A DNA stretch of 64,000 nucleotides from Phaeosaccion multiseriatum (GCA_965112735.1 OZ218956.1:2790001-2854000); one strand, 5' to 3'; shown: positions 14,387 to 31,251, counted from the stretch's first letter. The notes: a model not told the origin generated them from the letters alone. Numbers and translations: made by a program.

Positions 14387-16203
14387 TTAGGTCGCCTGGC
14401 GCATGAGGCTGCCGGACCGACTTGGTAAGTGGTTCTGCTCCGATAGACTCGAGCCCAGAGCGGGCAAAGGAGGCGAAGACTTGTTGCCAAAGCGGCTGTT
14501 TACGAGCAAAGAGAAAGCAAGGGTGACGAGGAGGGAGGACAGAGAAGCTCAGAGAATGTCCAGCACTCGCTTTGAACTGGAGAGGGAAGGAAAGGAGGAG
14601 GGAAGGGAAGGGAAGGAAGGAAGGAAGCGACCAAGGAAGGAAGGCAGGAAGGGAAACATGGGAGGTAGGGAAGGAGGGGAAGCAAGCAAACAAGCCAGCA
14701 AGAGACAAGAGAAGCCCGCAAAGCAAGCGCACCTGACGGAGGATATGCCGCTCCCCTCTGACTGACTCTGCGGATGCGTCGGATGACCGCCAGCCACACC
14801 GCCAGCCACGCCCCCCCCCTTTTGCCCGGCGCTGCTGTCCAACGAGAACACGGCCTCCAATGAGAGTTGAGCCCTTTGGAAGAAGCTCTTGAGAGGCGCC
14901 TCCATGGCTCGAACCCTTTCTTGCCCCTCGTCCGCCGCAGTGAAGCGCAGCGTCGCCTCCCACACCGACATCATGTCCACCAGAGCGTCCATGCTGCTCA
15001 TGCTGCTGGAGCTGATAGACAGTTGCCGGTGGTGGTGATGGCGCCCGCTGGTACTACCACTACTTCCACCACCACCACTGCCACTAGCGCTGACCTTGCC
15101 TCGGAAGACCTGATGCAGAGGCCGGAGGTGATCTCGAGCGGTCTTGGCGTCCCCCTGCATTAAGAGCACTCGAGCGAGCATAGTGGTGCCTTGCACCTCA
15201 TTCAACAGAAAGCCCTCCTGTCGGGCGTTACGGATACACATGGTAAGGTGCGGGTTGGCGGCCTTGAGGCTTTGAATCTGCTGCGCCTCCTCTCTGCTGC
15301 ACGGCGAGAGTTGCCTCTCCTGCCTCCCCTGCCTCTCCACCCCCTGCTGCTGCGAGGCTACACCTAACCCCCCGTTGAGCGCATCATTCTGCTGCTGAGA
15401 AGTGGCGCCTGCACTCGTCTTGGCCCTTCCGCGCCGCTCTTCCCTAGCGCTACTGCTGGTGCCGAAGAAGCGAAGCCGCTCTGTGACCATTCCGCCGCCT
15501 TCCCCAGAGGAGGCCTCTCCGCCATTCATTCGGGAGCCCGAGCCCCGGTGGTGGTGCGGCGGTGAGTGGAGGTGTCTCCAAGACAAGAGACCGTCTGCGG
15601 AGCCCTTCCAACGCGGCGACACCGATCGGCGCCTCTTCTTACCGTAGATGCTGCCGCCGCCGCTGCCGCTGTGACCGTTGGGGGCGAGGGACCGTCTGCT
15701 TTTTACTTCATTGACTTCATTGCCGATATCCTGCAGGGCATCGAGCCACACTTCGTTTCCGCTGCCGATGTCCTGCAGCGCGTCCAGCCAGCCTTCATCA
15801 CCACCATCCCCACCACCACCTTTACGGCCGCCTCCGCCTGCTGCCCCCTTCTCCTCTTCCCCCTTAAGCCAGACTGAGGACAAGTCTGCCCGCCCCCCGG
15901 CCCCGCCCCACTCCTCCTCCCCCTGGCTCTCTTCTTCGTCGTCGACTACCCGAGCAACCAATGACATGGGTTTCAGACGGTCGAGGTTGGGCATCATCTC
16001 ATCGTTTTCTCTTCTATCCTCCTCCGCGTCATGCTCCTCCTCCTCCTCCTTCTCCTCCTCCTCCTCTTTCGTCTCCTCCTCCTTCTCCTCCTCCTCCTCT
16101 TTTGTCTCCTCCTCCTTTATCTCCTCCTGCAACTCCTGTTCCACACCTCCACCCTTTTCCTTTTGCACACTATCCCGCTCCCTCTTGTCGTCATCAAACG
16201 CCA

Positions 16204-16241
<38 letters not shown>

Positions 16242-19200
16242 AGCAGCTCATTCCCTGGATCAGCATAGCCCTCCTGCATCTGCTCTCCTCCATTCCTAGT
16301 CGTCGCAAAGGCCAAGCTACCCATCCCGCCATCCCCCTCTCCATCCTCGTCTCCATCGCTGCCGCTGGCGCTGCCCTTCGCTCGGCCCAACTCGAGCATC
16401 GCCCTGCCTCCAAGACACTCCGACGACGTGGGTGGGCTTGTAGAAGTGAGTGAGGACATGAGGGAGGGATTCTTGCTCGCGTCTGCCAAAAGAACCACCA
16501 CATCTTCGCCACCTTCCTCCTCTTCGTCCTCGGACTTGCCCTTGCCCTTGCCGGCCCACCTTTCCAAGGATGCCAGCGATTCCTTTTGCTCCTCTCCTGG
16601 GTCTATTGGTGGTGGGGCGGAGAGCGGCGGCGACGTGGAAGGCGGTGGTACATCTTGCTCCTCTCGCTCCTGCCCACCACCATCCTGCAGCGGGTTCGGA
16701 GGCTGCACAGTGGTTTCCTCCTTGTCATCCGCCCTCTCTTGGCCCTCCTCCTCGCCGGCGTCGCGATCCCCCTTCTGCTTCTCTTCCTCTCTTTCTGGCA
16801 GCTTGCGTTTGCTCCTCCTCCGCCATCCTCGCCACCCTTCGTCCTCCTCGCTCCTCCTCCTTCCGTCCCTTCCACCGCCCTCTGCTGCCTTCTCATCTCC
16901 CCCTTTCATTTCCCGCAAAAGCTGGGCGTGGTCCCTCAGAGCGATGGAAAGGTCAATTTCCTCGCTCAAGAAGAGAGGATCGCCCCTCTCATACCCATAC
17001 CCTGCGTAGCCCATTTCAGATCTCCCTTCAACATCTTCTGTGTCTTCTTTCTCTTGTTCTTGTTCTTGTTCTTGTTCTTGTTCTTGTTCTTGCTGCTCAT
17101 GCTCTCCCTCCTCCTGCTTCTCATCATCCTCCTCCTCCTCCTCCTCCTCCTCCTCCTCCACCTCCTCTCCCCTATCCAGCAAAGTCATGATGCCCCCGGT
17201 GCTACCCCTCTTGGCATAGCCGCCCATCGCCGGAGCCATCCACGATGACTTTCGCCCCACCGTCGCTGAGGGCATCATGTCTGCGTGTGCGCTTGACGCC
17301 ATCGCCTTATCTCCCCCCTCGCCTCCTCCTCCTCCTCCTCCTCCTCCTCCCCCTCCTTGCCCCATCCTGGCGCCACACACGCCTCGGGCTGATTGATTAT
17401 GGGCATCTGCGCCTGGCAGGCGCAGCAGCTCCCTCTCGTTCTTGAGGTCCGCAATGGCGGCGTTGACCTTCATAAAACACAGCTCCCCTCTGCAGCAGAA
17501 GAGCAGCGCCGACGTGATGGAGGGAAGCGTGCCCTTGACCCACCCCTGGCCGCTTCCCGTCTCCATCCAGAGCATGAGCATCTCCTCAGCTGTGGCAAAG
17601 TCCTGTCCCAGCAGCGCTGCCTGGTAACCGGCGCTGCAGTACAGCGGATTGGGATGCTTACCCACCCGCTCCCTCACCTCCTGCACCCTCCCCTGCACCT
17701 GATCCCGCACCACCTTCGACAGCATGAAGTACCTCTCTGCTGGCCCTCGTCGAGTCGCCTCGTAAATCTCACACACCAGACCGATAAGTCGCATTCTCCG
17801 CATCACAAAGGGGTTCGTGCCCCGAAATCTCTCCGGCACACGCCTGCGAATGGAGCGATAGAGCGCGCTGAGACCACTCAGCTCTCTTGTGGCAATCCAG
17901 ACCAGCCCGATCCAACTGCACACTACATAGAGATGGAAAGGCTTGGAAGAAGCCGAGGAGCTGCCAATGTAGGCAGCAAAACCCGCACGGGCCGTGGTGT
18001 ATTTGGGTGCGTCTGCTCGCATGCACTCGGCCATCGCCTTGGCGCCGAGCAGCATGGCAACAGGCTCGTACATGACTAGGCAAAGGGGGGAGGGCCGGCC
18101 TGCTGCCTCCCACACGTCCACCTCCTGGCAATAGCGGTCCACCTGTTCGTTTGTTCGTTCGTTTGTTTGGAGACATCGGGGCCCACACCACACAAGAGAG
18201 AAGACAGGTGGGTGGTGAGTAGGGCGGTGGATGACGGGGCGAGCGATGGGAGAGGCTCATTGTCTATTGCCTCTTGCCTCTACGCTCTTTGACTGGGACA
18301 TGCCACAGTATCGTATGTATCCAATCCAAAGATCACAAAAGGGTCAGAGCACACTCACACACACACACACACACACATAAAGAAACAGGCACTGTACCCA
18401 CCCCACTCACCCACCCTTGCCGCTACCACAACACGCGTCGAGCCAAACAAAGTGCCTCTTCTTTGCCTCTCCACCACCACACATCACCTTTCTACTCTGT
18501 CTGACATGGCCTTGCTTCTCCACCACCACACATCACCTTTCTACTCTGTCTGACATGGCCTTGCTTCTCCACCACCACACATCACCTTTCTACTCTGTCT
18601 GACATCGCCTTGCTTCTCCACCACCACACATCACCTTTCTACTCTGTCTGACATGGCCTTGCTTCTCCACCACCACACATCACCTTTCTACTCTGTCTGA
18701 CATGGCCTTGCTTCTCCACCACCACACATCACCTTTCTACTCTGTCTGACATGGCCTTGCTTCTCCACCACCACACATCACCTTTCTACTCTGTCTGACA
18801 TGGCCTTGCTTCTCCACCACCACACATCACCTTTCTACTCTGTCTGACATCGCCTTGCTTCTCCACCACCACACATCACCTTTCTACTCTGTCTGACATC
18901 GCCTTGCTTCTCCACCACCACACATCACCTTTCTACTCTGTCTGACATCGCCTTGCTTCTCCACCACCACACATCACCTTTCTACTCTGTCTGACATGGC
19001 CTTGCTTCTCCACCACCACACATCACCTTTCTACTCTGTCTGACATGGCCTTGCTTCTCCACCACCACACATCACCTTTCTACTCTGTCTGACATGGCCT
19101 TGCTTCTCCACCACCACACATCACCTTTCTACTCTGTCTGACATGGCCTTGCTTCTCCACCACCACACATCACCTTTCTACTCTGTCTGACATGGCCTTG

Positions 19201-22200
19201 CTTCTCCACCACCACACATCACCTTTCTACTCTGTCTGACATGGCCTTGCTTCTCCACCACCACACATCACCTTTCTACTCTGTCTGACATGGCCTTGCT
19301 TCTCCACCACCACACATCACCTTTCTACTCTGTCTGACATGGCCTTGCTTCTCCACCACCACACATCACCTTTCTACTCTGTCTGACATCGCCTTGCTTC
19401 TCCACCACCACACATCACCTTTCTACTCTGTCTGACATCGCCTTGCTTCTCCACCACCACACATCACCTTTCTACTCTGTCTGACATCGCCTTGCTTCTC
19501 CACCACCACACATCACCTTTCTACTCTGTCTGACATCGCCTTGCTTCTCCACCACCACACATCACCTTTCTACTCTGTCTGACATCGCCTTGCTTCTCCA
19601 CCACCACACATCACCTTTCTACTCTGTCTGACATCGCCTTGCTTCTCCACCACCACACATCACCTTTCTACTCTGTCTGACATCGCCTTGCTTCTCCACC
19701 ACCACACATCACCTTTCTACTCTGTCTGACATCGCCTTGCTTCTCCACCACCACACATCACCTTTCTACTCTGTCTGACATCGCCTTGCTTCTCCACCAC
19801 CACACATCACCTTTCTACTCTGTCTGACATCGCCTTGCTTCTCCACCACCACACATCACCTTTCTACTCTGTCTGACATCGCCTTGCTTCTCCACCACCA
19901 CACATCACCTTTCTACTCTGTCTGACATCGCCTTGCTTCTCCACCACCACACATCACCTTTCTACTCTGTCTGACATCGCCTTGCTTCTCCACCACCACA
20001 CATCACCTTTCTACTCTGTCTGACATCGCCTTGCTTCTCCACCACCACACATCACCTTTCTACTCTGTCTGACATCGCCTTGCTTCTCCACCACCACACA
20101 TCACCTTTCTACTCTGTCTGACATCGCCTTGCTTCTCCACCACCACACATCACCTTTCTACTCTGTCTGACATCGCCTTGCTTCTCCACCACCACACATC
20201 ACCTTTCTACTCTGTCTGACATGGCCTTGCTTCTCCACCACCACACATCACCTTTCTACTCTGTCTGACATCGCCTTGCTTCTCCACCACCACACATCAC
20301 CTTTCTACTCTGTCTGACATCGCCTTGCTTCTCCACCACCACACATCACCTTTCTACTCTGTCTGACATCGCCTTGCTTCTCCACCACCACACATCACCT
20401 TTCTACTCTGTCTGACATCGCCTTGCTTCTCCACCACCACACATCACCTTTCTACTCTGTCTGACATGGCCTTGCTTCTCCACCACCACACATCACCTTT
20501 CTACTCTGTCTGACATGGCCTTGCTTCTCCACCACCACACATCACCTTTCTACTCTGTCCGACATCGTCCGCTGCCTTCCTACAAACCCCACAAACGACA
20601 CGACAAAAAAAACACGGCAAACCGACAACAGATACACGCACGCATGTACGCACGCACCTGTGCCAAGTCCCCATCCACAATGGCCTTGGCAGCCAGCACG
20701 CCCGCCACCTCCAGCCTCAGCAGCGGGGGCAGGTCCTCCTCCGCATAGAGCGGCTCAATAGTGAGCTTGAAGGCTTTGTCCTGGTCCGAGGCAAGCAAGT
20801 GATGCGCCTTGAAGAGGTGGGCTCGAACAAAGTCCTCCTTCAGCACCAGCCCCATGCTGACGGCCGCCTTGTGCCCGCTGAGCTCCACCGCTCGATCGGC
20901 GAAGCGAGCCATGTCTGCACTATTTTCTCCCTTTGTGAACTGAGCAATCTCGCAGCCGGCGAGCACCTGTGTGTGTGTGTGTGTGTGGGTGGGTGCGTGA
21001 GGACCAAGTATGTTAAGTTCGTGGGGTGCGTGACTATGGAATCTGCTCTGCTTCGCTCTCTTCCCCTCACACACACACTACACCCACCAGTGCAAAGTCC
21101 AGCGCGTGTCTCTCCGGCCAGCTCCTTTTCTGTAACGGTCGCATGATGCCCACCCCCAACAGCTCCAGCGCCGCCTCTACCATGTCGTGCGCCTCTCCGT
21201 AGCTGCCCACAGGGAGCAGCGTCCGCCGCACGGCGATGGCGTAGGCCCTCACAGCGTGGAGCACCAACACGTTCCAACCCTCAGCCCCCCCGTAGTCGCC
21301 AAGCTCCTCCTTGGCGGGAGGATCACACACGCACTGACGCCAATGATCAGCGATGACGAGGTGTTTGAGCTCGCTAGGGAGGGGGGGGGGGGGGAGAGGG
21401 GTCGCAGCAAGATAAAAGCAATGGGGCCGGAGGGGCAGAGGAGAAAGCGGTACGGCAGGGCAAGAGGGAAGGGAAGTCAAGCGATGCTCTCACCACTCCT
21501 CCTTCCGTTCCTCGCCCTCTATAAGGAGAGGTAGGAGCCGCGAAACAGACTTGAGTTCTCCTTCGATGGATGGCCCTTCGCCCGTGCCCCCTCACTCCCT
21601 GCCTCCCTGCCTCCCTCCCTCCTGCCCTCATTTACTCACAGACACCCTCACTCACTCACTCACTCACTCACTCACCTTCCCTGGTCCTTCTCGAGGTACA
21701 GCGCCGCCCTACGGTGCAGCTTTCTGCGGTAGCTGTGAAGGAGCATTCCGTAGGCCGTGTGTCTCAGGACGGAAGAGTAAAAGTAAAAGTTCCTCCTTAA
21801 GCCCGTCTGCAAGTTCTCAATCTTCCACATGAGAAGGTTATCGTTCGAGAGCCGCTGGAGGGAGTCTGCCAGCTGACGCTCGCCAATGTCGGCGGGGAAC
21901 ACCTTGAGAGCAAGGAGGGCCTCCAGGGTGAACACTTCACCCACCACACTGGCCACCTTGGAAGCGAGGGTGGGTGCGAGAGCGGGTGTGGGGTGGGACA
22001 GACAGCGGGAGAAAAGAGAGAGGAGGAGGGGGGGGGGGGGGAAGGGGTCAGGGGAGAGCGGTGAGTGAGACAAACAAAAAACTGAGAGAAACACACAGAG
22101 GGAGAGATACACACACACACACACACACACGCAGAGAGAGAGAGAGAGCCCCTTCTTGCCCCCTCCCCGCCCCCCCTTGATGACCCACTCCCTCCCTCCC

Positions 22201-22927
22201 CCACCCCTAACCTTGAGCACCAAGCTGGCGAGGGGGTCCAACGCGTCGATCTGCGCTACAGCAATGTCCTTGAGCGAGGAGGGAATGCTTTCCACAAGCG
22301 ACGCCGCCACCCCCCCCGATCCCTCCTTGCCCCCCTTGCTAGCCTGCTCCCGCTTGAAGGCCTCTGACAGGCCCGCTACAAGCCGCTCTTCGTCGGCGCC
22401 GTCGCCAGCCCCCTCCTCCTCGTAATCATCATCGTGATCATCGTCGGGGTCGCGTTGGTCGTCTTCGGTCGTGTTGGTCGCCTTGTTGCCCGAGCTCAGG
22501 GCTGCCTCAGCGGGCAGCAGCTTCCCCTCCCCCCAAGCCCCTGTTGATCCTCCGCTGCTACTTGAGAGAATTCTCCTCCTGGTGGGTTGTGCCCTTAACG
22601 TCTCTGCCACCGTTCCAATGTGGCTGTGCCGCCCGTTGTTGTTTCTCTCTAGAGCTGCTGAAGGTACTACCGCAGTAGCTGTAGCTGCCGACAAGGAGAA
22701 GGTTCTTGTGGCTCTTCCGTCGGAAACCCCCGCCTTCCTCCGGGGGTCGTTCTCGTTGCGAACCTTCCCTCTCGAAAAGGATAGCCTGCCAAAGCCGCCG
22801 CCGCCGCTCTTGCGCTTCAATGTCAGCCCCTTCCAGCCCTTCTTTCCTTCCTTATCAACACTACCCCTAGTCACTCCTACCCCGCCTCCTCCTGCTGCTC
22901 CTGGTACAGCTGCTGTATCACCAGCTG

Positions 22928-22961
<34 letters not shown>

Positions 22962-25900
22962 CGCAATGGCGTCCTCCTCCTCCTCCTCCTCCTCCTCCAG
23001 CCGCGCCTCTTCCTCCGTTGGTGGTGGGCGGAAGGGCTCAATCTGAACCCCTCCTGCTTTCTCCAGGGCACTGCACATTTCCCGAATGAAGAAAGGGTTG
23101 CCTTCACAGTTGCTCACCACCACCTCCTTCAAAGAAGCGTCGAGGCTGTACACGCCGAGGCAGCTTGCAGCTAAGGCCGACGCGTCCTGCGACGATGCAT
23201 GTCATGAAAGTGCACATTTGGTGGTAGTGGTGGTGGTGTGTGGGGGGGGGGGGGCAGAGCAAAGGGATGAGGGATGAGGAGAGGGAAAGAAAGGCGGGAG
23301 GGAGGGAGGGAGAAGCAAGAAGCTCGCAAAAAGCACTTGTGGGGAGGAGGGCGACCCTTGCCCCCTCATTCCTTTCGATTTGGACTCTGACTGACTCAGC
23401 GCTCAACTCGTGGCCGTGGCAGAGCCAAACACACAAGGAAATAACAAAAACTAAACGAAAGGCGAAACGAAAGGCGAAACGAAAGGCGAAACGAAACGAA
23501 CACACGAAACGCACCTTCTCATTGAGCGTGGGAAGGCCAATCTTGCTCACCCCAGGCACGGCGAGGAGCTGCCTGTACCTCTGCCTGCCCCCTCCCTCCT
23601 TGTAGTACTGCTCTGGTCGGCAGGACAGTACGAAGCTCACCCCCTCTGCGCGCAACGCAGGCGCCCGCTCCCATATGTCAATGAGCACTCGCAAAGACGT
23701 GGCGTCGGTGTAGTGAAGCCCGTCAATGGCCACCACAAGCCCTTTCCTCTTGCCCCGGGTCGGGTCCGCCTTGGCCCCAGAGCGCAACAGCCCCACACAG
23801 AGCTGCCGCAACAGACGGTTCTTCTCCTGAGGGGGCAAGTTGTAAAAGGGCTTGGCACAGTCCTTGGGAGCTCCCTTGAGGCCCACCCCCAATTGCACAG
23901 ACAGGATGGGCAGGACGTTGCTAATGTCGTCGGATAAGAGTGCCTTTACCGCCGCAAAGTCGTAGCTCTTAGGTCCGTCTGGGGTGTGTGTATGTGTGTG
24001 TATGTGTGTGTGTGTGTGGGTGTGTGGGTGTGTGTGGGTGTGTGTGGGTGTGTGTGGGTGTGTGTGGGTGTGTGTGTGTGGGTGGGTGGATGTAAGGAGC
24101 GTGTTGGTGTAAGGGCCGTGTGGCGAGAGGAGGGAGGGGAAAACAGAAGAGGGGCCGTGAGTGGTGTCGTGCTGAGGTATAACTGAAGTAGTAGGCGGGT
24201 ACTACTGGAGAGCAGAGAGCAGACGGTGCGAGTGAGCGAGAGAGTCCTAGATTGGGGCAGGAAGGGGCCAGCTCCAAAATCATGTCTACTCATCGCTCTC
24301 TTGTAAGCTAAAAACCCCACGCGCACCATCAAACTGCCCTTCCTTCACGCCGTCCTGGGCCACGCTACTCAAAACACGCAAGCAACAGAGTTTATCCTCT
24401 TTGCTTATCTGTGTGTGTGTCCCTCCCCCCGCCCCAGAATGATATCCTTCACTTGCACCCCCTCGCCCCCCTGACCTTCTCCACAGCCCCACCCCAACCC
24501 GTCCCGGTACCTGTCGTGCTTCGAACCAACCAACCAACCAACCAACAGACCAATCAACCAATCAATCAACCTACCAACCAGCCAACCAACCAACCAACCT
24601 GCGGAGGCGGGTACATCAAGGAGCTCATCAATGATGTGTGTGACGAGCTGCTCCACCAATTGCAAGGGTTGCATACTGTCGGTGGAGTCGCAGATGAGCC
24701 GCACCAGCCCACACCTGCCCCTGCTTCCACTTCCGCTTTGGTGCGGCGTCTTCTCCTTGTTCTTCTCCCCCTGCTGCTGCGCTACCACGGGCAAGTCTCC
24801 TCCTCCCTCGCCGCTATCGTCTCTGGTATCACTACCACCAACACCACCACCACCATCGTGAGGGAGAGCAGTAGCCCCGGCATCAGCCGCAGCATCAGCC
24901 GCAGTAGCACCAGCAGACGCACTACTCTCCACCCCGACTGACGAGTCGGCCCCACCACCACCACCACCGACAGCAGCAGCACCACCGGCAGCGGGGGTAG
25001 CAGGAGGCCCATCGGCAGCCGCCTTGCTCGCCTCCGCCTCCACAGAGGAGGAGGAGCAAAAGCCGCCCTTCTGCAGGAAGCTGTCCGCCGCCGCGAGCAT
25101 GAGCGCCGTCTTGCCCATACCCGCGTCAGCCTCAATGACCACCGTCCTCCCCTTGCCCTGGGCAGCCCCCTCCATCACGCGCCGTACCTCCACGAGTTGG
25201 TTACGCCTCCCCACGAGCACGTTGCCGCCATCTGCACCGCCCGCGCTGTCGCCGTCGCCGTCACCTCCCAAGCCCTCCTCCCCCTCCTCCTCCTCCCCCG
25301 GGTGCAACCCCATCGCCGACCTATGCAGTCTGCGCTCTGCCTTGAAGATGCGAATGTCCTCTGATTTCCCCTTGGGACGAATGACCCCGACTGGCTGCAC
25401 CTTGACTAGACCCCCCTTGCCAGAGGTGCTCACGAGAGAGCGAACGGCGTTGGAGTCCGCAAGCACCCCGATTCCCTCTCCGTGTGCGTGTGCGGCGAGA
25501 CGAGCGGCGAGGTTAACCGTGTCCCCGACGAGCGCATACTCGCATCGCACTGTGCTGAGGCCCAGAAGGGAGATGCACACCTGAGGTGGGGTGGGGTGGG
25601 GTGAGGTGGGGTCGGGGGGGAGGGGGTGTAGCGGTGGTGGTGCGCGACCAAGACGGCAGGGGTGTGAAGGTGGACGTGAAGATGGAGGTGAAGATGGAGG
25701 TGGAGGTGGAGATGAGGGCAGGGATGGGGAGGGGGGAAAGAAGACAAGACTCTCAATCAGCTCCAGTCTCAGCATTTCAGAGACTCTAACAGACTCTCTC
25801 TAGTGTCTTGGTACTGCACGCCAGTGCTGGGCACGTCAGTGGAGAACCAACCTGTCCCGCAGCCACGCCGATGCCGGCAAGGTGGTCCCTCTTTTTGAGC

Positions 25901-27937
25901 TGGTGGTGGATCTCAGTTGCGGCCTGGAGCGCCTTCTCATTGTTGTTCTCAAAGCTGCACCCCGGGGTTCCGAAGGCGAAGATCAAGCTCAACCCCTTCT
26001 CGTCCATCATTACCTTTGGGTCGGGAGAGAAGAGAGGAGAGGAAGAGAGGAGAGAGAGAGAAACGGAGGAGAGAGAGAGAAAGAGAGAAAAGAGAGGAAG
26101 AGAGAAGAGAGAGGGGAAGAGAGAAGAGAGAGAGGAAGAGAGAAGAGAGAGGAAGAGAGAAGAGAGAGAGGAAGAGAGAAGAGAGAAGAGAGAGAGGAAG
26201 AGAGAAGAGAGAGAGGAAGAGAGAAGAGAGAGGGGAAGAGAGAAGAGAGAGGGGAAGAGAGAAGAGAGAGAGGAAGAGAGGAGAGAGAGAAACGGAGGAG
26301 AGAGAGAGAAAGAGAGGAGAGAGAGAGGAAGAGAGAAGAGAGAGAGGAAGAGAGAAGAGAGGGGAAGAGAGAAGAGAGAGAGGAAGAGAGAAGAGAGAGA
26401 GGAAGAGAGGAGAGAGAGAAACGGAGGAGAGAGAGAGGGGAAGAGAGGAAAAAAGAGGAGGAGGGGAGAGAGAGGAGGAAGACAGGAGAGTGACGGAGAC
26501 GGAGACGGAAGCCAAGCCACGGAAGCCACAGAGTCACAGAGTCAGGAGGACATGAATGGGGGCCGGGTGCACTATCGGCTTCCGACAAGGAGGGACGGAG
26601 GGAGGGAGGGTGTTGCCCCACATGTCCATCACACAGTGCCATCGCCCCCCATCCAGTGCCATCGCCCCCCATCCAGTGCCATCGCCCCCCATCCAGTGCC
26701 ATCGCCCATCGCCCATTCCGCCCAGGCAGAGGACCGCGTAACTACCGCACCTTGTTGATGAAGCCCTTCTTGCGCAGCACCACCCGTGCCGCCAGCTCCA
26801 CCGCCCTTGCCACCGCGTCCACCTGGTCTGTCATACACGGCTTTCTTCCGCCCCCGCCTCCTCCCCCTCCCCGTCCACCCCCTCCTTCTTGCCCCGCTCT
26901 CTCCTCCTCCCCCTCGTCCGCCTGTCCTCCTCCGTCCTCGCGTGAGTCATGCTGCCCCTGCTGCTCCCCCTTCGCGACGCCCCCCCCCCCCCCGCCGCCT
27001 TTGCTGACGAGAGTGCTCAACTGCTGCGGCACGCTGTTTCCCCTCACCATCCCTAACCGCATTCCCTGACTGATGCCCATGGCAGCATCTTGGAGCGTCA
27101 GAGTGTGTGAGGAGCTCACCACTCCTCCTCCGCCGGTGCCGGTGTGTCGCGCGTGCAGGGCCCAAGAGGCCTCCCTTGCGAGCCCCCCGGTGGTGCCGTA
27201 ACCGTCGTAACCGTCACAGTCTTCTTCCCCGTCTTCCTCTTGTGAAGGGAGAGCCTAATGTTAGTGGAGGGGGGGGGGGGTCCGTGTGTGTGTGTGCGTA
27301 GATTCGGTATGAGAGGGGGCTTGCGGACAGAACAGTGTCAAGTGCATGAGCGCACGGACGACCATTAGGTGCCATCGAAGACTGCCGTACAACCAACTTG
27401 CATACAGAGCACCAATCGACCAACAGACAGACCTGGTCGTTGAGGTGCCCAATATCGAACTTGACAAAGGCCACTGCAGCCGGGCGCAGCTCTCCCAGCC
27501 ATGATACCTGAGCACACACCAGACGGCAAAGAAGGGAGTGGGAGAGGATAAGAGGGGAGGAGAGGAGGGGTGGGGGAGGGGGATCGTGGAGCATGAGCAT
27601 TCCAAGGCAGGCAAGGCGTTTGAGCCGAAGCACAGCACACGGCCTGGCTTGGCGACGTCGACTCCGCTCGGGAGAAGGAAATACAACAGCCATACCTGGG
27701 CGTTCTTGAAGCTACTGCTGCCGCTCAAGCTACTGACGCCCTTAAATAGGGGCCAGGGCCTCGTGAAGGAAGAGGAAGGTCCATTGCTCGCGCCCTCCCC
27801 CCCCTCGTCATCGCTTCCCTCCAGCCTCCGCTTCGCCTCCTGCACTACATCATTATCCGCTGCAGCCGTTGCCGTTGCAGCAGCACCCCCACCACTTCTG
27901 CCAACACTCCCACCACCACCACCACCACCACCACCAC

Positions 27938-27977
<40 letters not shown>

Positions 27978-28117
27978 TGGGTCTGAGGAAGGAGAGTAGA
28001 TGTCGTCCCAGTCATCGAGCGAGCCCTCATCCTCCCCCTCTCCAATGTTGTCCAGTCGGAGAAGGCTCCTCCCCTTCCCTCCCAGTCCCATGGCCCCGCC
28101 GCCGCCGCCGCCCCCCC

Positions 28118-28155
<38 letters not shown>

Positions 28156-30599
28156 TGCTGCTGTCCCTGTTGCACCACTAGTCCATGCTTAAATCTCTCA
28201 GCAAAAGAGTCCGGAATGTAACGCAAAAAGGCCTCTGCCAGCAGCTTGTAGTCATCCTCCCCAAACGACGGGTCCTCCAGGAGTGGCGCCAGCTCAATCT
28301 CCTTCTTGAGCCCCGACGAGGGGGCTCCCAATCCACCCCCGAGGGATGTCCCCCCTACTACTGATCCCATGGTGACCCTACCTTGCTCCGCCTCCACTTG
28401 GAGAGAGTCGGGAAGGCTATTCGGGGCTTCCAGGCGCACGCAGCCGTCGGAGAGTTTCTCGCCCCACTCTCTGTTGAAGTTGGGAGGTGTGTTCGAGGTC
28501 GAGTAAGGCAGCAGCAGCAGCAGCAGCCGCCGCCAACAGGAGGGGGAGCAGGAGGAGGAGGAGGAGGAGTAGGGAGGGAGGGAGGGATCGAGGGTTAGGC
28601 GGGGTAGATGGGAGGATGGATGGTGCACACACACACAGAGAGACAGAGAGAAAGAGACAGGCGGCGTAGGTATTGGAAGGAGAGCCAAGGCTGGAGGGGA
28701 ACAAAAAGTACTTTTGGGGGGGGGGGGTACTTTTGCTTCTGTGTTTCGTCACAGCACCGCACCCCAATCGCCACTGTACTCACCCCGCCCCACACAGATT
28801 GGCCGCCTCCCTGCTGAGCACGCAGTCCTTCTTGAGGCTCTTGTCGTGCGCCACCGCCAGCTGCGTGATGACGGGCCCACACACAAAGTGCCATCGCTTG
28901 GTGCAGTAAGAAGCGACGGTGTTGACACGTTGCCCGGCCATACCGGGCCCTTCCTTGCCTCCCCCTCCCCATGTAGTGCCGACTTCCACGGCGGTAGGAT
29001 TTCCCGCACCGATGGAGCCGTGCAATGTGAGTTTGAGGTCGATGCTCTCGCCGAACTTCTTCTGCTGCACGCTGTAAGGGGAGTGATCCTGCAGCATGGC
29101 GCGGGCGCAGTCCACGGCCACATGGGTAGCGAAAGCGATGCCCCTGGCCTCACACGCCCGGCACTCGCCGCAGCCTTCCAACAAGTGGTGTACATCAAAA
29201 CCAAAGTCGGCCCTCTCGGGGTGGCAGCAGGGTTCGTAATTGAGCAGCCGGTGGCCGTGTTTGGATTCACAGATGGCCGCAAAGACTCGCCCGCACCACT
29301 CATTCCTGGCAAGCTCCGCTACCGAAAAACTGACGAGCAAAGCGTCGCCGGCGAAGCACTCTACGTCCCCCCCTCGGTTGTAAATCTCCCCCAGCAGGTT
29401 TCCAAAGTATGAGTTGATAATGTTCCAAAACGCCTCAATACCGCTGTCCCCGAAGCGGGCGAACTTCTCCATGCTGGAGGTGAAGCCGCTCACATCCACA
29501 AACAGCACCGCCGCCGCCCCGGGGAACATGTGCACCCTCCCCTTTATCTTGCCGCCCTGCATCGGTCCCTGCCCCTGCCCTGGCCCTTGCATCTGCTGCG
29601 ATTGCTGCTGCATGACCAACTGCTGCTGTTGCCTGTGAAAGGCGTTCATAGGTGCTCCCCCCGGCATCAGTCCAGGCGTGGCACTCGGCCCCGCCCCCGT
29701 GCCGAGGGCAGCCGTGGAGCCAGCACAGGAAGACCTCACTGATGACCGTGCCGACACGGAGTCCTCCCCCCCCCCCGGCGACTCAGCGCGCGTAGGCGTC
29801 GAAGCGAAGCCTCCCACCCTTCCTGTCGTACTGGAGCTGGACAGGCCTGCTGTATGAGGAGGATGAAGAGAAGCGGTGTGGAAAAAGAGGAACCCATCAG
29901 TGAAAGGAAGTTGTGACAGAAGTTTTGGGGTGCGGGGCAAGGCTAGACACAATTTCGTTTTTTTAGTTTTAGTTTGCAGTCCCACATAGAGGAGTTCAGC
30001 CACTTGGAATGGTTTGCTTCCCTCTCTCTCTCTCTCTCTTGCACACCCCGCCTGCATCTGTATCCACATAGAAAGCTTACCGGCGTCATCGCCTGCCGTG
30101 GCAACAGCAGCAGCCCCTGCGGGCAGCTCAAAGCCATTTGCGCTGAGCAGTCTTGATACGACCCTCCTGGGCATGCACGCCGCGAGGCACTGCAGAGCGA
30201 TGGAGGGGGCCGTGAGCTCGAAGGTGAGGCTGAAGTCCTCTGCCCGGCTGCGGAGGGACGGCCTCATGCTGCGTGTCCTGTCCAAGCCGTGCGGTGCAGT
30301 GGCGCCGGTGGTGGCGGAGGAGGGGGAGGTGGAGGAGGCTGGCTCGAGCAGAGGGGCTGCAAGGCTCCGACGCTGTTGCGGAAGGCCCTCCGAGTCATCT
30401 TGATGTGGGGGCAAGAAGGGACGGGGCATTGGCGTTTGGAGTGTTCGCAGAGGGAGTGGGCAGGAACGTTTGGAGTGTTCGCAGAGGGAGTGAGCAGGAA
30501 CGACCGGAGGTGAGTCAGGGGAGCAGAAGAGCCTGTATATCCCCAGATTAGATCCCTGCTGCCCTCTTCACGTACGTACACACACGCGAGACACGCACA

Positions 30600-30673
<74 letters not shown>

Positions 30674-31251
30674 GTGCTGGGCGCCCCCGGAATGGTCAAC
30701 CCGCTGGAAATCTCCTGCTGGCTCACAGACCTCTCGATGCCGCGGGAGAGCTTCTTCAGCTTGCGGATCCGCTTGGTCGCCCAATGCGTCTTGGCCGGCT
30801 GAGCCGAAGAAGGATAGCCTGGTGCGGACTCTGACTGCCGCCGACTGAAAGCAGAGGAGAGGAAAGGGTCTTCCGGCCCGGCGACAGCAGCAGCACCAGT
30901 GGAATAAGATACTGTGGCCACCGTCGCCCGAGGGAACAGTCCGCCTGACATTCTATTCCCGTCCCCAGAGCCTGGTCCTGGTCCTGGTCCACCGCCACCC
31001 CCCCCCTCACCCTCCTTGGTCTCGCCGGCATTGATGGCGGCACCGCCATTATCCACCCTCACCACACCCGAGACGACGCCCTCCGATGACCCCAGAATGT
31101 CCCCTGTCGTGGACCTCCTTTCCTTCTTTCCGGTGGCATCCTTGACAACCGATGTGGATGACGACGCGATTCTTGACATCCTCCCCCCCGAGGCCTCTGG
31201 CACGTTGCTGGCATCATGTCCCTGAGCCTCTTTCGAATGTGCGCAACCCAT
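14387..31251 (-). CDS. Soluble adenylyl cyclase-like (ADCY10/sAC family) protein: class III cyclase C1+C2, STAND P-loop NTPase, winged helix, helical/TPR-like C-terminus
   Basis: C1 VLFVDVSGFT...GGDVECFAGDALL; C2 WLGELR, FINK|VMMDEKGLSLIFAFGTPG, EYALVGDTVNLAARL; LVGR and Walker A EADAGMGKT; Walker B VVAIDGLHYTD; CEGNPFFIREM; LKVASVVG and AYGMLLHSYRRKLH. About 15 exons with consistent splice phases. Stop is at 14387 if the 14496-14732 intron is spliced, otherwise at 14549. Confidence 0.92.
18469..20567. repeat. 49-bp minisatellite, about 43 near-identical copies, inside a cyclase intron
   Basis: Unit CTCCACCACCACACATCACCTTTCTACTCTGTCTGACAT(G/C)GCCTTGCTT; no spacers. Confidence 0.98.
26025..26712. 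repeat. Cyclase intron with an AG-rich higher-order repeat (26025-26490) and a 20-bp tandem repeat ATCGCCCCCCATCCAGTGCC x3.5 (26634-26712)
   Basis: Directly visible. Confidence 0.9.

What the first reader, a model, noticed from the sequence alone, without database searches (positions are those of the whole stretch)
29140..29360. sAC-type cyclase that appears to lack the bicarbonate site and has a Cys/His (CxxCxxC) insertion beside the active site
Seen: after the catalytic GDALL the protein reads ...EWCGRVFAAICESKHGHRLLNYEPCCHPERADFGFDVHHLLEGCGECRACEARG..., about 55 extra residues with 7 Cys and 5 His, including CGECRAC. Both metal-binding Asp (VDVSGFT, AGDA) and the C2 residues INK and NLAAR are intact. 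Established knowledge, aligned by eye from memory: human ADCY10 binds bicarbonate through Lys95 (GGDILKFAGDA) and Arg176 (IGQAVDDVRLA); here those positions are Cys (GGDVECFAGDA) and Ala (CGPVITQLAVA). The Thr405-equivalent is Ala (EYALVG). Inference: a catalytically competent cyclase that may sense metal, an Fe-S cluster or redox state instead of CO2/bicarbonate.
Basis: partly seen in the sequence, partly recalled or inferred. Interest (0 to 1): 0.8.

Follow-up and report, generated by a model that had tools for sequence, protein, structure and literature searches.

The report
Cys/His-rich loop in algal soluble cyclase
A stramenopile alga's soluble-type adenylyl cyclase really has a cysteine/histidine-rich 65-residue loop and lacks the mammalian bicarbonate-binding residues. 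The missing bicarbonate site is shared by its whole subfamily, while the Cys/His stretch is found in no relative, so a sensor role is unproven.

Summary
**Observation: confirmed.**
- The minus-strand C1 exon (28784-29849) reads as quoted.
- Between strand beta3 (GDALLVSF) and helix alpha3 there are 65 residues; the median in 157 related cyclase domains is about 12.
- The loop holds 7 Cys and 5 His, including CGECRAC.
- A formal alignment to human ADCY10 puts Cys at Lys95, Ala at Arg176 and Ala at Thr405. Both metal Asp and the C2 Lys/Asn/Arg are intact.

**Interpretation: partly supported.**
- Loss of the bicarbonate residues is not special to this gene. Cys at the Lys95 position (motif GD[VI][EDQ]CF) is invariant in the stramenopile relatives aligned: Tribonema, Heterococcus-like, Ectocarpus, Choristocarpus and unnamed lineages.
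- Bicarbonate-insensitive sACs lacking K95 or R176 are already published (PMC12867704).
- The Cys/His segment is absent from every available relative. Their loops are 11-49 aa with 0-4 Cys.

**Is the segment coding?** It looks coding by codon usage and has no gene-typical splice signals, but no RNA data could be laid.

**What it most likely is:** a lineage-specific expansion of a variable surface loop, possibly zinc-stabilised. A conserved metal or redox sensor is not supported.

Other readers of this scan noted several sAC-like paralogues elsewhere in this genome.

Interest is modest.

The parts
14549..31251 (-). Approximate extent of the multi-exon gene. It encodes an N-terminal MGCAHSK, then C1, a low-complexity linker, C2, a P-loop (AAA_16-like) NTPase and a helical/TPR-like tail.
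   Evidence: tblastn of the full-length relatives P0003/P0004 (2360 and 2189 aa) and of P0005/P0155 gives collinear hits from 30303 down to 17468. AAA_16 scores E=6e-7 and TPR_4 is weak. The two ends of the gene are not verified.
28784..29849 (-). Exon encoding a low-complexity N-terminal stretch and the whole C1 catalytic domain.
   Evidence: Acceptor CATACAG| at 29850 and donor GGG|GTGAGT at 28783. Human ADCY10 matches at E=2e-7. The AlphaFold2 model has pLDDT 81, and the top Foldseek hits are all human sAC.
29137..29331 (-). The 65-residue beta3-alpha3 loop (residues 77-141 of the 259-aa C1 translation).
   Evidence: Loop length comparison. Codon log-likelihood is +0.22 per codon in frame, like confirmed exons, with a GC-by-position pattern of 0.60/0.49/0.71.
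29152..29295 (-). Cys/His-rich core, C89 to C136, with 7 Cys and 5 His. It includes HGH, CCH, HH and CGECRAC.
   Evidence: The middle of it (about K100-C130) has no counterpart in any relative. pLDDT there is 60-65.
29356..29358 (-). Cys68, at the position of human Lys95 (bicarbonate ligand). It is invariant in the relatives aligned.
28855..28857 (-). Ala235, at the position of human Arg176.
   Evidence: second, weak stretch. Relatives have A, T or G here.
29494..29496 (-). First metal-binding Asp (D22; human D47).
   Evidence: invariant.
29344..29346 (-). Second metal-binding Asp (D72; human D99).
   Evidence: invariant.
26751..26759 (-). INK at the end of a C2 exon. The Lys corresponds to the substrate-binding Lys334 of human sAC, or the Lys just 5' of VMMDEKG does.
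25500..25535 (-). C2 motif A-LVGDTV-N-LAA-R, with Ala at the Thr405 position and the Asn412 and Arg416 equivalents.
   Evidence: The same Ala or Ser is present in relatives.
28903..28965 (-). Second, Gly-rich insertion in C1 (residues 199-219), predicted disordered.
   Evidence: pLDDT is below 50. It is absent from relatives.

Best explanation
The stretch is real coding sequence. It is a lineage-specific enlargement, rich in Cys and His, of an already variable surface loop (beta3 to alpha3) in the C1 catalytic domain. The protein is a stramenopile soluble-adenylyl-cyclase-like enzyme (C1-C2-NTPase-helical tail).

The enzyme probably makes cAMP, since the metal Asp pair and the C2 Lys/Asn/Arg are intact. 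It cannot bind bicarbonate the mammalian way, but that is a property of its whole subfamily, where an acidic residue plus an invariant Cys replaces the hydrophobic residue plus Lys95.

The Cys/His residues most likely hold one or two zinc ions that tie down the long excursion. That would be a structural knuckle, with C130/C133/C136 at the N-terminal cap of helix alpha3 plus a His or a distant Cys. It would not be a conserved sensor wired to catalysis.

Shown here: the sequence, the alignment, the subfamily-wide traits, the non-conservation and the coding-like composition. Inferred: zinc binding, the location away from the active site and enzymatic activity.
For: -: formal alignment to ADCY10.
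- a confident C1 fold that matches sAC best. The insert has pLDDT 60-80 with short helices, while the Gly-rich second insert scores 42.
- the Cys at the K95 position is invariant in the aligned relatives. Loop length there varies from 11 to 49 aa. The Cys/His core is unique to this gene.
- codon usage and GC-by-position in the insert match confirmed exons in the reading frame only.
- six confident introns of this gene all have G at -1 and G at +5 of the donor and a CAG acceptor, and are about 190 nt or longer.
- the only in-frame GT..AG pair inside the unique part (29270 to 29175, 96 nt) has T at -1, A at +5 and an AAG acceptor.
- Cys+His enrichment with P about 5e-5.
- the only profile resemblance is to the C-terminal end of the QueC profile (E=0.49, chance level).
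Against: - No RNA run is indexed for this organism.
- No relative closer than about 55% identity exists in the searched collections, so conservation within the genus or family is untested.
- No known Zn or Fe-S domain profile, solved structure or Atlas cluster matches the insert.
- This gene is full of neutral low-complexity insertions, so this one may also be functionless.
Confidence: 0.42

Rival explanations
1. Neutral expansion segment. This would be a lineage-specific insertion in a tolerant surface loop, with no metal bound and no function, and its Cys/His richness would be a compositional accident.
For: - The same gene carries many insertions absent from relatives: about 120 aa of low complexity before beta1, a Gly-rich insert at residues 199-219, and polyQ/polyG/polyA in the linker.
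- Loop length at this site ranges from 11 to 49 aa among relatives and up to 120 aa in other cyclases.
- The Cys/His are not conserved.
- No domain match.
Against: - Unlike the other insertions it is not low-complexity.
- Twelve Cys/His in 49 residues with CxxCxxC, HxH, CC and HH spacing is unusual for a cytosolic loop (P about 5e-5 to 2e-6).
- It is predicted partly helical rather than disordered.
Confidence: 0.33
2. The Cys/His segment would bind a metal or an Fe-S cluster, or form reversible disulfides. It would couple metal or redox state to cyclase activity, replacing bicarbonate sensing.
For: - CxxCxxC is a classical Fe-S/Zn spacing.
- The pseudo-symmetric pocket has an invariant Cys instead of Lys95, and a second Cys (VCGP, the I168 position) is conserved in the Tribonema/Heterococcus/Ectocarpus group.
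- Together these hint at thiol chemistry in this subfamily.
Against: - The loss of K95/R176 is shared by relatives that lack the Cys/His segment, so the two are not coupled.
- No fourth-ligand CP motif.
- No profile match.
- By fold topology the loop lies at the far end of beta3 from the catalytic Asp (inference).
- No conservation.
Confidence: 0.12
3. Gene-model artefact. Part of the stretch would be an unrecognised in-frame intron, and the mature protein would have a loop of about 33 aa, like Tribonema's 35 aa.
For: - Removing 29270 to 29175 (96 nt, GT..AG, in frame) would give a loop of 33 aa that aligns end to end with Tribonema's.
- There are no RNA data to exclude it.
Against: - The donor has T at -1 and A at +5, and the acceptor is AAG without a pyrimidine tract. 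All six confident introns of this gene have G at -1, G at +5 and a CAG acceptor, and are about 190-700 nt long.
- Codon usage and GC3 of the stretch are coding-like in this frame only.
- The alternative with good signals (29296 to 29144) would delete segments homologous to uninterrupted ORFs of relatives.
Confidence: 0.08

Closest known systems
Human soluble adenylyl cyclase ADCY10 (PDB 4CLF, 4CLL, 5IV4)
   Same: - Tandem C1-C2 in one chain.
- Best sequence hit (E=2e-7) and best fold hit.
- D47/D99, K334, N412 and R416 equivalents are present.
- An N-terminal helix and a downstream P-loop NTPase plus helical tail.
   Different: - Lys95 is Cys, Arg176 is Ala and Thr405 is Ala.
- The beta3-alpha3 loop is 65 aa instead of about 10.
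- There are many low-complexity insertions.
- The N-terminus looks acylated (MGC...).
Bicarbonate-insensitive, pH-controlled sACs of sea urchin (R176N) and salmon (K95N), PMC12867704
   Same: They are sAC orthologues with intact catalytic residues that have lost one of the two bicarbonate ligands. The paper concludes that such replacement abolishes HCO3- sensitivity.
   Different: Those are animal proteins that lose one ligand to Asn. Here both ligands are lost, Lys is replaced by an invariant Cys preceded by Glu/Asp/Gln, and pH regulation is untested.
Stramenopile 'GDV[ED]CFAGDA' sAC-like subfamily: Tribonema minus JKP88DRAFT_152612 (P0001), Heterococcus-like P0006/P0155, Ectocarpus P0161/P0162, Choristocarpus P0007, unnamed P0002-P0005 and P0158-P0160
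   Same: - 30-55% identity over C1.
- Cys at the K95 position and no Arg at the R176 position.
- Ala or Ser at the T405 position in the members whose C2 was examined.
- An enlarged beta3-alpha3 loop with a first helix (PICQAIRAA aligning with WCGRVFAAI).
   Different: None has the Cys/His-rich middle segment. Their loops are 11-49 aa with 0-4 Cys and 0-3 His.
Spirulina CyaC and other class IIIb bacterial cyclases (PDB 1WC0)
   Same: Class III fold with the same metal Asp pair.
   Different: They are homodimers with Lys and Thr at the specificity positions, are bicarbonate-responsive, and have a short beta3-alpha3 loop.
C-terminal end of the QueC profile (Pfam PF06508)
   Same: The GCGECRACEAR stretch matches profile positions 191-207 of 210. 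From my own knowledge, that part of QueC is a CxxCxxC zinc site.
   Different: The score is at chance level (E=0.49, 10 bits). There is no homology, and the fourth ligand is undefined.

Membership tests
sAC-type (ADCY10-like) class III cyclase | Two class III catalytic domains (C1, C2) in tandem in one polypeptide | tested here: met
   C1 is at 28784-29559. C2 pieces at 27439-27507, 26751-26830, 25852-26040 and 25500-25583 are collinear with the C2 of P0003/P0004/P0005/P0155.
sAC-type (ADCY10-like) class III cyclase | Catalytic residues split between domains: two metal Asp in C1, and Lys, Asn and Arg in C2 | tested here: met
   D22 and D72; Lys of INK / KVMMDEKG; VNLAAR.
sAC-type (ADCY10-like) class III cyclase | Closest solved relatives are ADCY10 rather than transmembrane AC or GC | tested here: met
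   phmmer top hits are 4OYA and 4CLF. Foldseek ranks 1-17 are all human sAC.
sAC-type (ADCY10-like) class III cyclase | C-terminal STAND-type P-loop NTPase and TPR-like region | tested here: inconclusive
   AAA_16 scores E=6e-7, 30.6 bits, just under the 32.6 cut-off, with a GMGKT Walker A. TPR_4 is weak. The full-length relatives P0003/P0004 carry PF13191/PF13401 and align down to 17468.
Bicarbonate-regulated sAC (mammalian mechanism) | Lys95 and Arg176 equivalents lining the pseudo-symmetric pocket | tested here: not met
   Cys68 and Ala235. Cys is invariant and Arg is absent at that column in the relatives aligned.
Bicarbonate-regulated sAC (mammalian mechanism) | Thr at the second specificity position (class IIIb, human Thr405) | tested here: not met
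   Ala in EYALVGD. Relatives have Ala or Ser.
Bicarbonate-regulated sAC (mammalian mechanism) | Activity stimulated by HCO3- | not testable with these tools
   Needs an enzyme assay.
Zinc-binding or Fe-S cluster-binding module | Match to a known metal-binding domain profile or structure | tested here: not met
   Pfam gives only the QueC C-terminus at E=0.49. PDB phmmer gives no hit at E<=10. The Atlas gives no usable hit.
Zinc-binding or Fe-S cluster-binding module | Four ligands in canonical spacing | tested here: inconclusive
   C130-x2-C133-x2-C136 is present, with candidate fourth ligands H124/H125, C111/C112 and others. No CP motif. The geometry could not be measured because no coordinates were returned.
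Zinc-binding or Fe-S cluster-binding module | Ligand residues conserved in orthologues | tested here: not met
   Only the C89 position (ICQ in the P0002-P0004 lineage) is shared with some relatives. The rest are absent. No relative above 55% identity was available.
Spliceosomal intron (artefact hypothesis) | Donor and acceptor like the gene's confirmed introns, and comparable length | tested here: not met
   the candidate inside the unique part lacks G at -1, G at +5 and a CAG acceptor, and is 96 nt against about 190 nt or more.

The most novel reading that the evidence does not exclude
The Cys/His segment, together with the subfamily's invariant pocket Cys (the Lys95 position) and the neighbouring VCGP Cys, might form a thiol/metal switch. 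In that case this algal sAC-like cyclase would report zinc, iron-sulfur or redox state rather than inorganic carbon. That would be a new input mode for soluble adenylyl cyclases in photosynthetic stramenopiles.
Probability: 0.1. Interest if true: 0.7.

Novelty: new variant of a known kind. Interest (0 to 1): 0.3.

Why it matters
sAC is the textbook CO2/bicarbonate sensor, and cAMP has been linked to CO2 responses in marine algae.

- **Subfamily result.** The stramenopile sAC-like relatives examined replace the bicarbonate-binding Lys with an invariant Cys and lack the Arg. Their regulation must therefore differ from the mammalian model. This fits the recent finding that non-mammalian sACs are not bicarbonate sensors.
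- **The Cys/His loop.** It would matter only if it binds a metal and affects activity. At present it is a single-species feature without expression or conservation support.

Tried and rejected
- **Reads.** No read or contig evidence for splicing was obtained. Letters of 26042-26252 were sent to no search tool afterwards: the local BLAST database was masked there, and later references stop at 26040 or start at 26260.
- **RNA runs.** The look-up of sequencing runs found four runs from one study that hold the DNA. None is on record as RNA.
- **Pfam.** It does not recognise the C1 exon as Guanylate_cyc, even at E<=10.
- **Closer relatives.** Three word searches, the exhaustive profile search of 1.84 billion representatives and the metagenome scan found no relative above about 55% identity and none with the Cys/His segment.
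- **The insert alone.** Pfam, PDB and ESM Atlas searches gave nothing. There is no second copy in the window by blastn/tblastn. The findings index by sequence gave nothing.
- **Structure.** The model's coordinates are not exposed, so Cys/His convergence could not be measured. A C1-C2 model of this protein was not attempted, because a spliced protein has no reference and long sequences may not be typed.
- **Intron hypothesis.** Rejected as unlikely.
- **Literature.** Searches found no description of stramenopile sAC pocket residues.

Full report
**What is there**

The window is GC-rich (about 60%) eukaryotic DNA with microsatellites and introns. The finding lies in a long minus-strand gene. Its pieces are collinear with full-length relatives of 2189-2360 aa, from 30303 down to at least 17468.

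- The C1 exon runs from 29849 to 28784.
- It is bounded by a CAG acceptor and a GGG|GTGAGT donor.

**Check of the observation**

phmmer against all PDB chains gives human ADCY10 as the best hit (E=2e-7). The alignment shows:

- VLMFVDISGFT aligns with AVLFVDVSGFT (first metal Asp).
- GGDILKFAGDALL aligns with GGDVECFAGDALL (second metal Asp).
- Lys95 therefore corresponds to Cys68.
- A second, weak stretch aligns GQAVDDVRLA with GPVITQLAVA, so Arg176 corresponds to Ala235.

An AlphaFold2 model of the exon's C1 part, built on a 10-sequence alignment, has mean pLDDT 81 and pTM 0.79. The 17 best Foldseek matches in the PDB are all human sAC, followed by CyaC.

For C2:

- KVFMFDKG aligns with KVMMDEKG.
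- EYALVGDTVNLAAR aligns with DYTILGDAVNVAAR of a photoactivated class IIIb cyclase.
- The substrate Lys, Asn and Arg are therefore present, and the Thr405 position is Ala.

The loop between beta3 and alpha3 is 65 residues with 7 Cys and 5 His. In 157 related cyclase domains aligned to one profile the median loop is about 12 residues. Against 914 aa of conserved coding sequence of the same gene (4.7% Cys+His), 12 of 65 has a binomial P of about 5e-5. That figure is post hoc.

**Is the insert coding?**

No RNA evidence could be obtained. Another agent working on this genome also reported finding no RNA data. Indirect evidence favours coding:

- **Codon usage.** A codon log-likelihood trained on homology-confirmed exons versus introns of this gene gives +0.22 per codon for the insert in frame, and negative values in the other frames. 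Confirmed exons score +0.08 to +0.58 in leave-one-out tests. Introns are mostly negative in all frames; the highest single value is +0.05.
- **Base composition.** GC by codon position is 0.60/0.49/0.71 in the insert against 0.62/0.46/0.75 in exons.
- **Splice signals.** Six confident introns of the gene all have G at -1 and G at +5 of the donor and a CAG acceptor, and are about 190-700 nt long.
- **Candidate intron 1.** The only in-frame GT..AG pair inside the unique part (29270 to 29175, 96 nt) has T at -1, A at +5 and an AAG acceptor.
- **Candidate intron 2.** A pair with better signals (29296 to 29144) would delete segments homologous to uninterrupted ORFs of relatives. WCGRVFAAI aligns with PICQAIRAA, and CEARGIAFATHVAVD aligns with ADARLAVATKVAVD.

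I put the intron artefact at about 8%.

**Relatives**

Five searches were run:

- three word-index searches in different length classes;
- an exhaustive HMMER profile search of 1.84 billion representatives, which found 5763 hits at E<=1e-3 but only 6 at E<=1e-30;
- a metagenome scan.

They recovered a small subfamily, identified through:

- Tribonema minus (P0001);
- a Heterococcus-like protein (P0006/P0155) and a JGI relative (P0160);
- Ectocarpus (P0161/P0162);
- Choristocarpus (P0007);
- P0005;
- an unnamed lineage with uninterrupted 2189-2360-aa ORFs (P0002-P0004, P0158, P0159).

Identity to the query over C1 is 30-55%. In the 12-sequence alignment the Cys at the Lys95 position is invariant, within the motif GD[VI][EDQ]CF. 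Among the 157 wider hits, 106 have Lys there and 25 have Cys, and the Cys is nearly always preceded by Glu or Asp. None of these relatives has Arg at the Arg176 column; they have A, T or G. Of the six relatives whose C2 was inspected, the four nearest (P0003, P0004, P0005, P0155) have Ala or Ser at the Thr405 position, as do the more distant P0012 and P0018.

The 'lost bicarbonate site' is therefore a trait of this stramenopile subfamily and is not specific to this gene. Loss of one of the two ligands is already published: sea-urchin sAC has R176N and salmon sAC has K95N, and both are bicarbonate-insensitive and pH-controlled (PMC12867704).

**The Cys/His segment is not conserved**

- All subfamily members except the brown-algal gene models have an enlarged beta3-alpha3 loop of 32-49 aa. 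It has a first helix and a conserved run into alpha3.
- The middle of the query's loop, about K100 to C130 (HGH, CCH, HH and the first Cys of CGECRAC), has no counterpart in any of them.
- Their loops hold 0-4 Cys and 0-3 His at non-aligned positions. Only the C89 position recurs, as ICQ in the P0002-P0004 lineage.
The caveat is that no relative closer than about 55% identity exists in the searched collections.
- The insert matches no domain profile, solved structure or Atlas cluster. The only resemblance is a chance-level hit of GCGECRACEAR to the C-terminal end of the QueC profile (E=0.49), which from my own knowledge is a zinc-binding CxxCxxC tail.
- In the model the insert has pLDDT 60-80 with short helices, and C133/C136 sit on the first turn of alpha3. 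A second, Gly-rich insert (residues 199-219) is predicted disordered with pLDDT about 42.

**How it most likely works**

The enzyme has all residues needed for cyclisation, so it is probably an active adenylyl cyclase (Lys at the base-recognition position). This is inference. Its pseudo-symmetric pocket carries Glu-Cys and Ala in place of Lys and Arg, so it should not bind an anion like bicarbonate. This is also inference, resting on the published role of K95/R176.

The Cys/His stretch is best read as a species- or lineage-specific expansion of a tolerant surface loop. Given the density and spacing of thiol and imidazole groups in a cytosolic protein, I think a small zinc-stabilised excursion is the most likely mechanism (about 0.4). 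A neutral, metal-free insertion follows at about 0.33. This gene has many other insertions that are absent from relatives.

A regulatory metal, Fe-S or redox sensor is possible but unsupported (about 0.12):

- The loss of the bicarbonate ligands is not coupled to the insert across relatives.
- By the topology of the class III fold, the beta3-alpha3 connection lies at the opposite end of the beta2-beta3 hairpin from the Asp-bearing turn. It is next to the active site in sequence, probably not in space.

**Comparison and novelty**

By domain order, catalytic residues and best sequence and fold matches, the protein belongs to the sAC-type cyclases. It fails the features that define bicarbonate regulation.

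The most solid new point is at subfamily level: an invariant Cys replaces Lys95 in stramenopile sAC-like cyclases. I found no description of this in two literature searches. The Cys/His loop itself is a single-gene curiosity until expression, conservation in sister species or metal content is shown.

I rate it a new variant of a known kind, with modest interest (0.3).

Other first-stage notes report several further sAC-like paralogues in this genome. I could not inspect them.

Noticed in passing
window 29356-29361 (Glu67-Cys68) and relatives P0001-P0010, P0155-P0162: Subfamily signature GD[VI][EDQ]CF: an acidic residue (Gln in one relative) plus an invariant Cys replaces the hydrophobic residue plus Lys95 of other sAC-like cyclases. 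Among 157 related domains, 25 have Cys and 106 have Lys at this position.
   Followed up: partly
window 28879-28881 (Cys227 in WHFVCGP): A second Cys, at the position of human Ile168 next to the bicarbonate-contacting Val167, is conserved in the query, Tribonema, Heterococcus-like, JGI P0160, Ectocarpus and P0010. It is Phe or Ser in the other lineages. Together with Cys68 it might form a thiol pair in the pseudo-symmetric pocket. The geometry was not tested.
   Followed up: no
window 29560-29849 (-) and 27990-28170 (-): There are long low-complexity insertions. About 100 aa rich in Ser/Gly/Ala/Gln lie between the N-terminal helix and beta1 of C1. PolyQ, polyG and polyA runs lie in the C1-C2 linker exon. 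Both are absent from relatives.
   Followed up: partly
window 31231-31251 (-): The upstream ORF begins MGCAHSK (Gly2, Cys3), a possible myristoylation/palmitoylation signal on a 'soluble'-type cyclase. Whether this ATG is the true start was not verified.
   Followed up: no
window 30590-30672: A long (CA)n microsatellite lies inside an intron of the cyclase gene. Similar (CA)n/(GT)n and GA-rich repeats fill other introns.
   Followed up: no
They lie in a repeat-rich intron between two C2 exons. They were left out of all later searches.
   Followed up: no
L002/L003 (PJEL010013029.1) and L084 (JAANST010353769.1): Relatives from unnamed NCBI assemblies encode the whole C1-C2-NTPase protein as one or two uninterrupted ORFs of 2189-2360 aa. 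This indicates an intron-poor stramenopile-like lineage that carries the same Cys-for-Lys95 signature. The organism was not identified.
   Followed up: no
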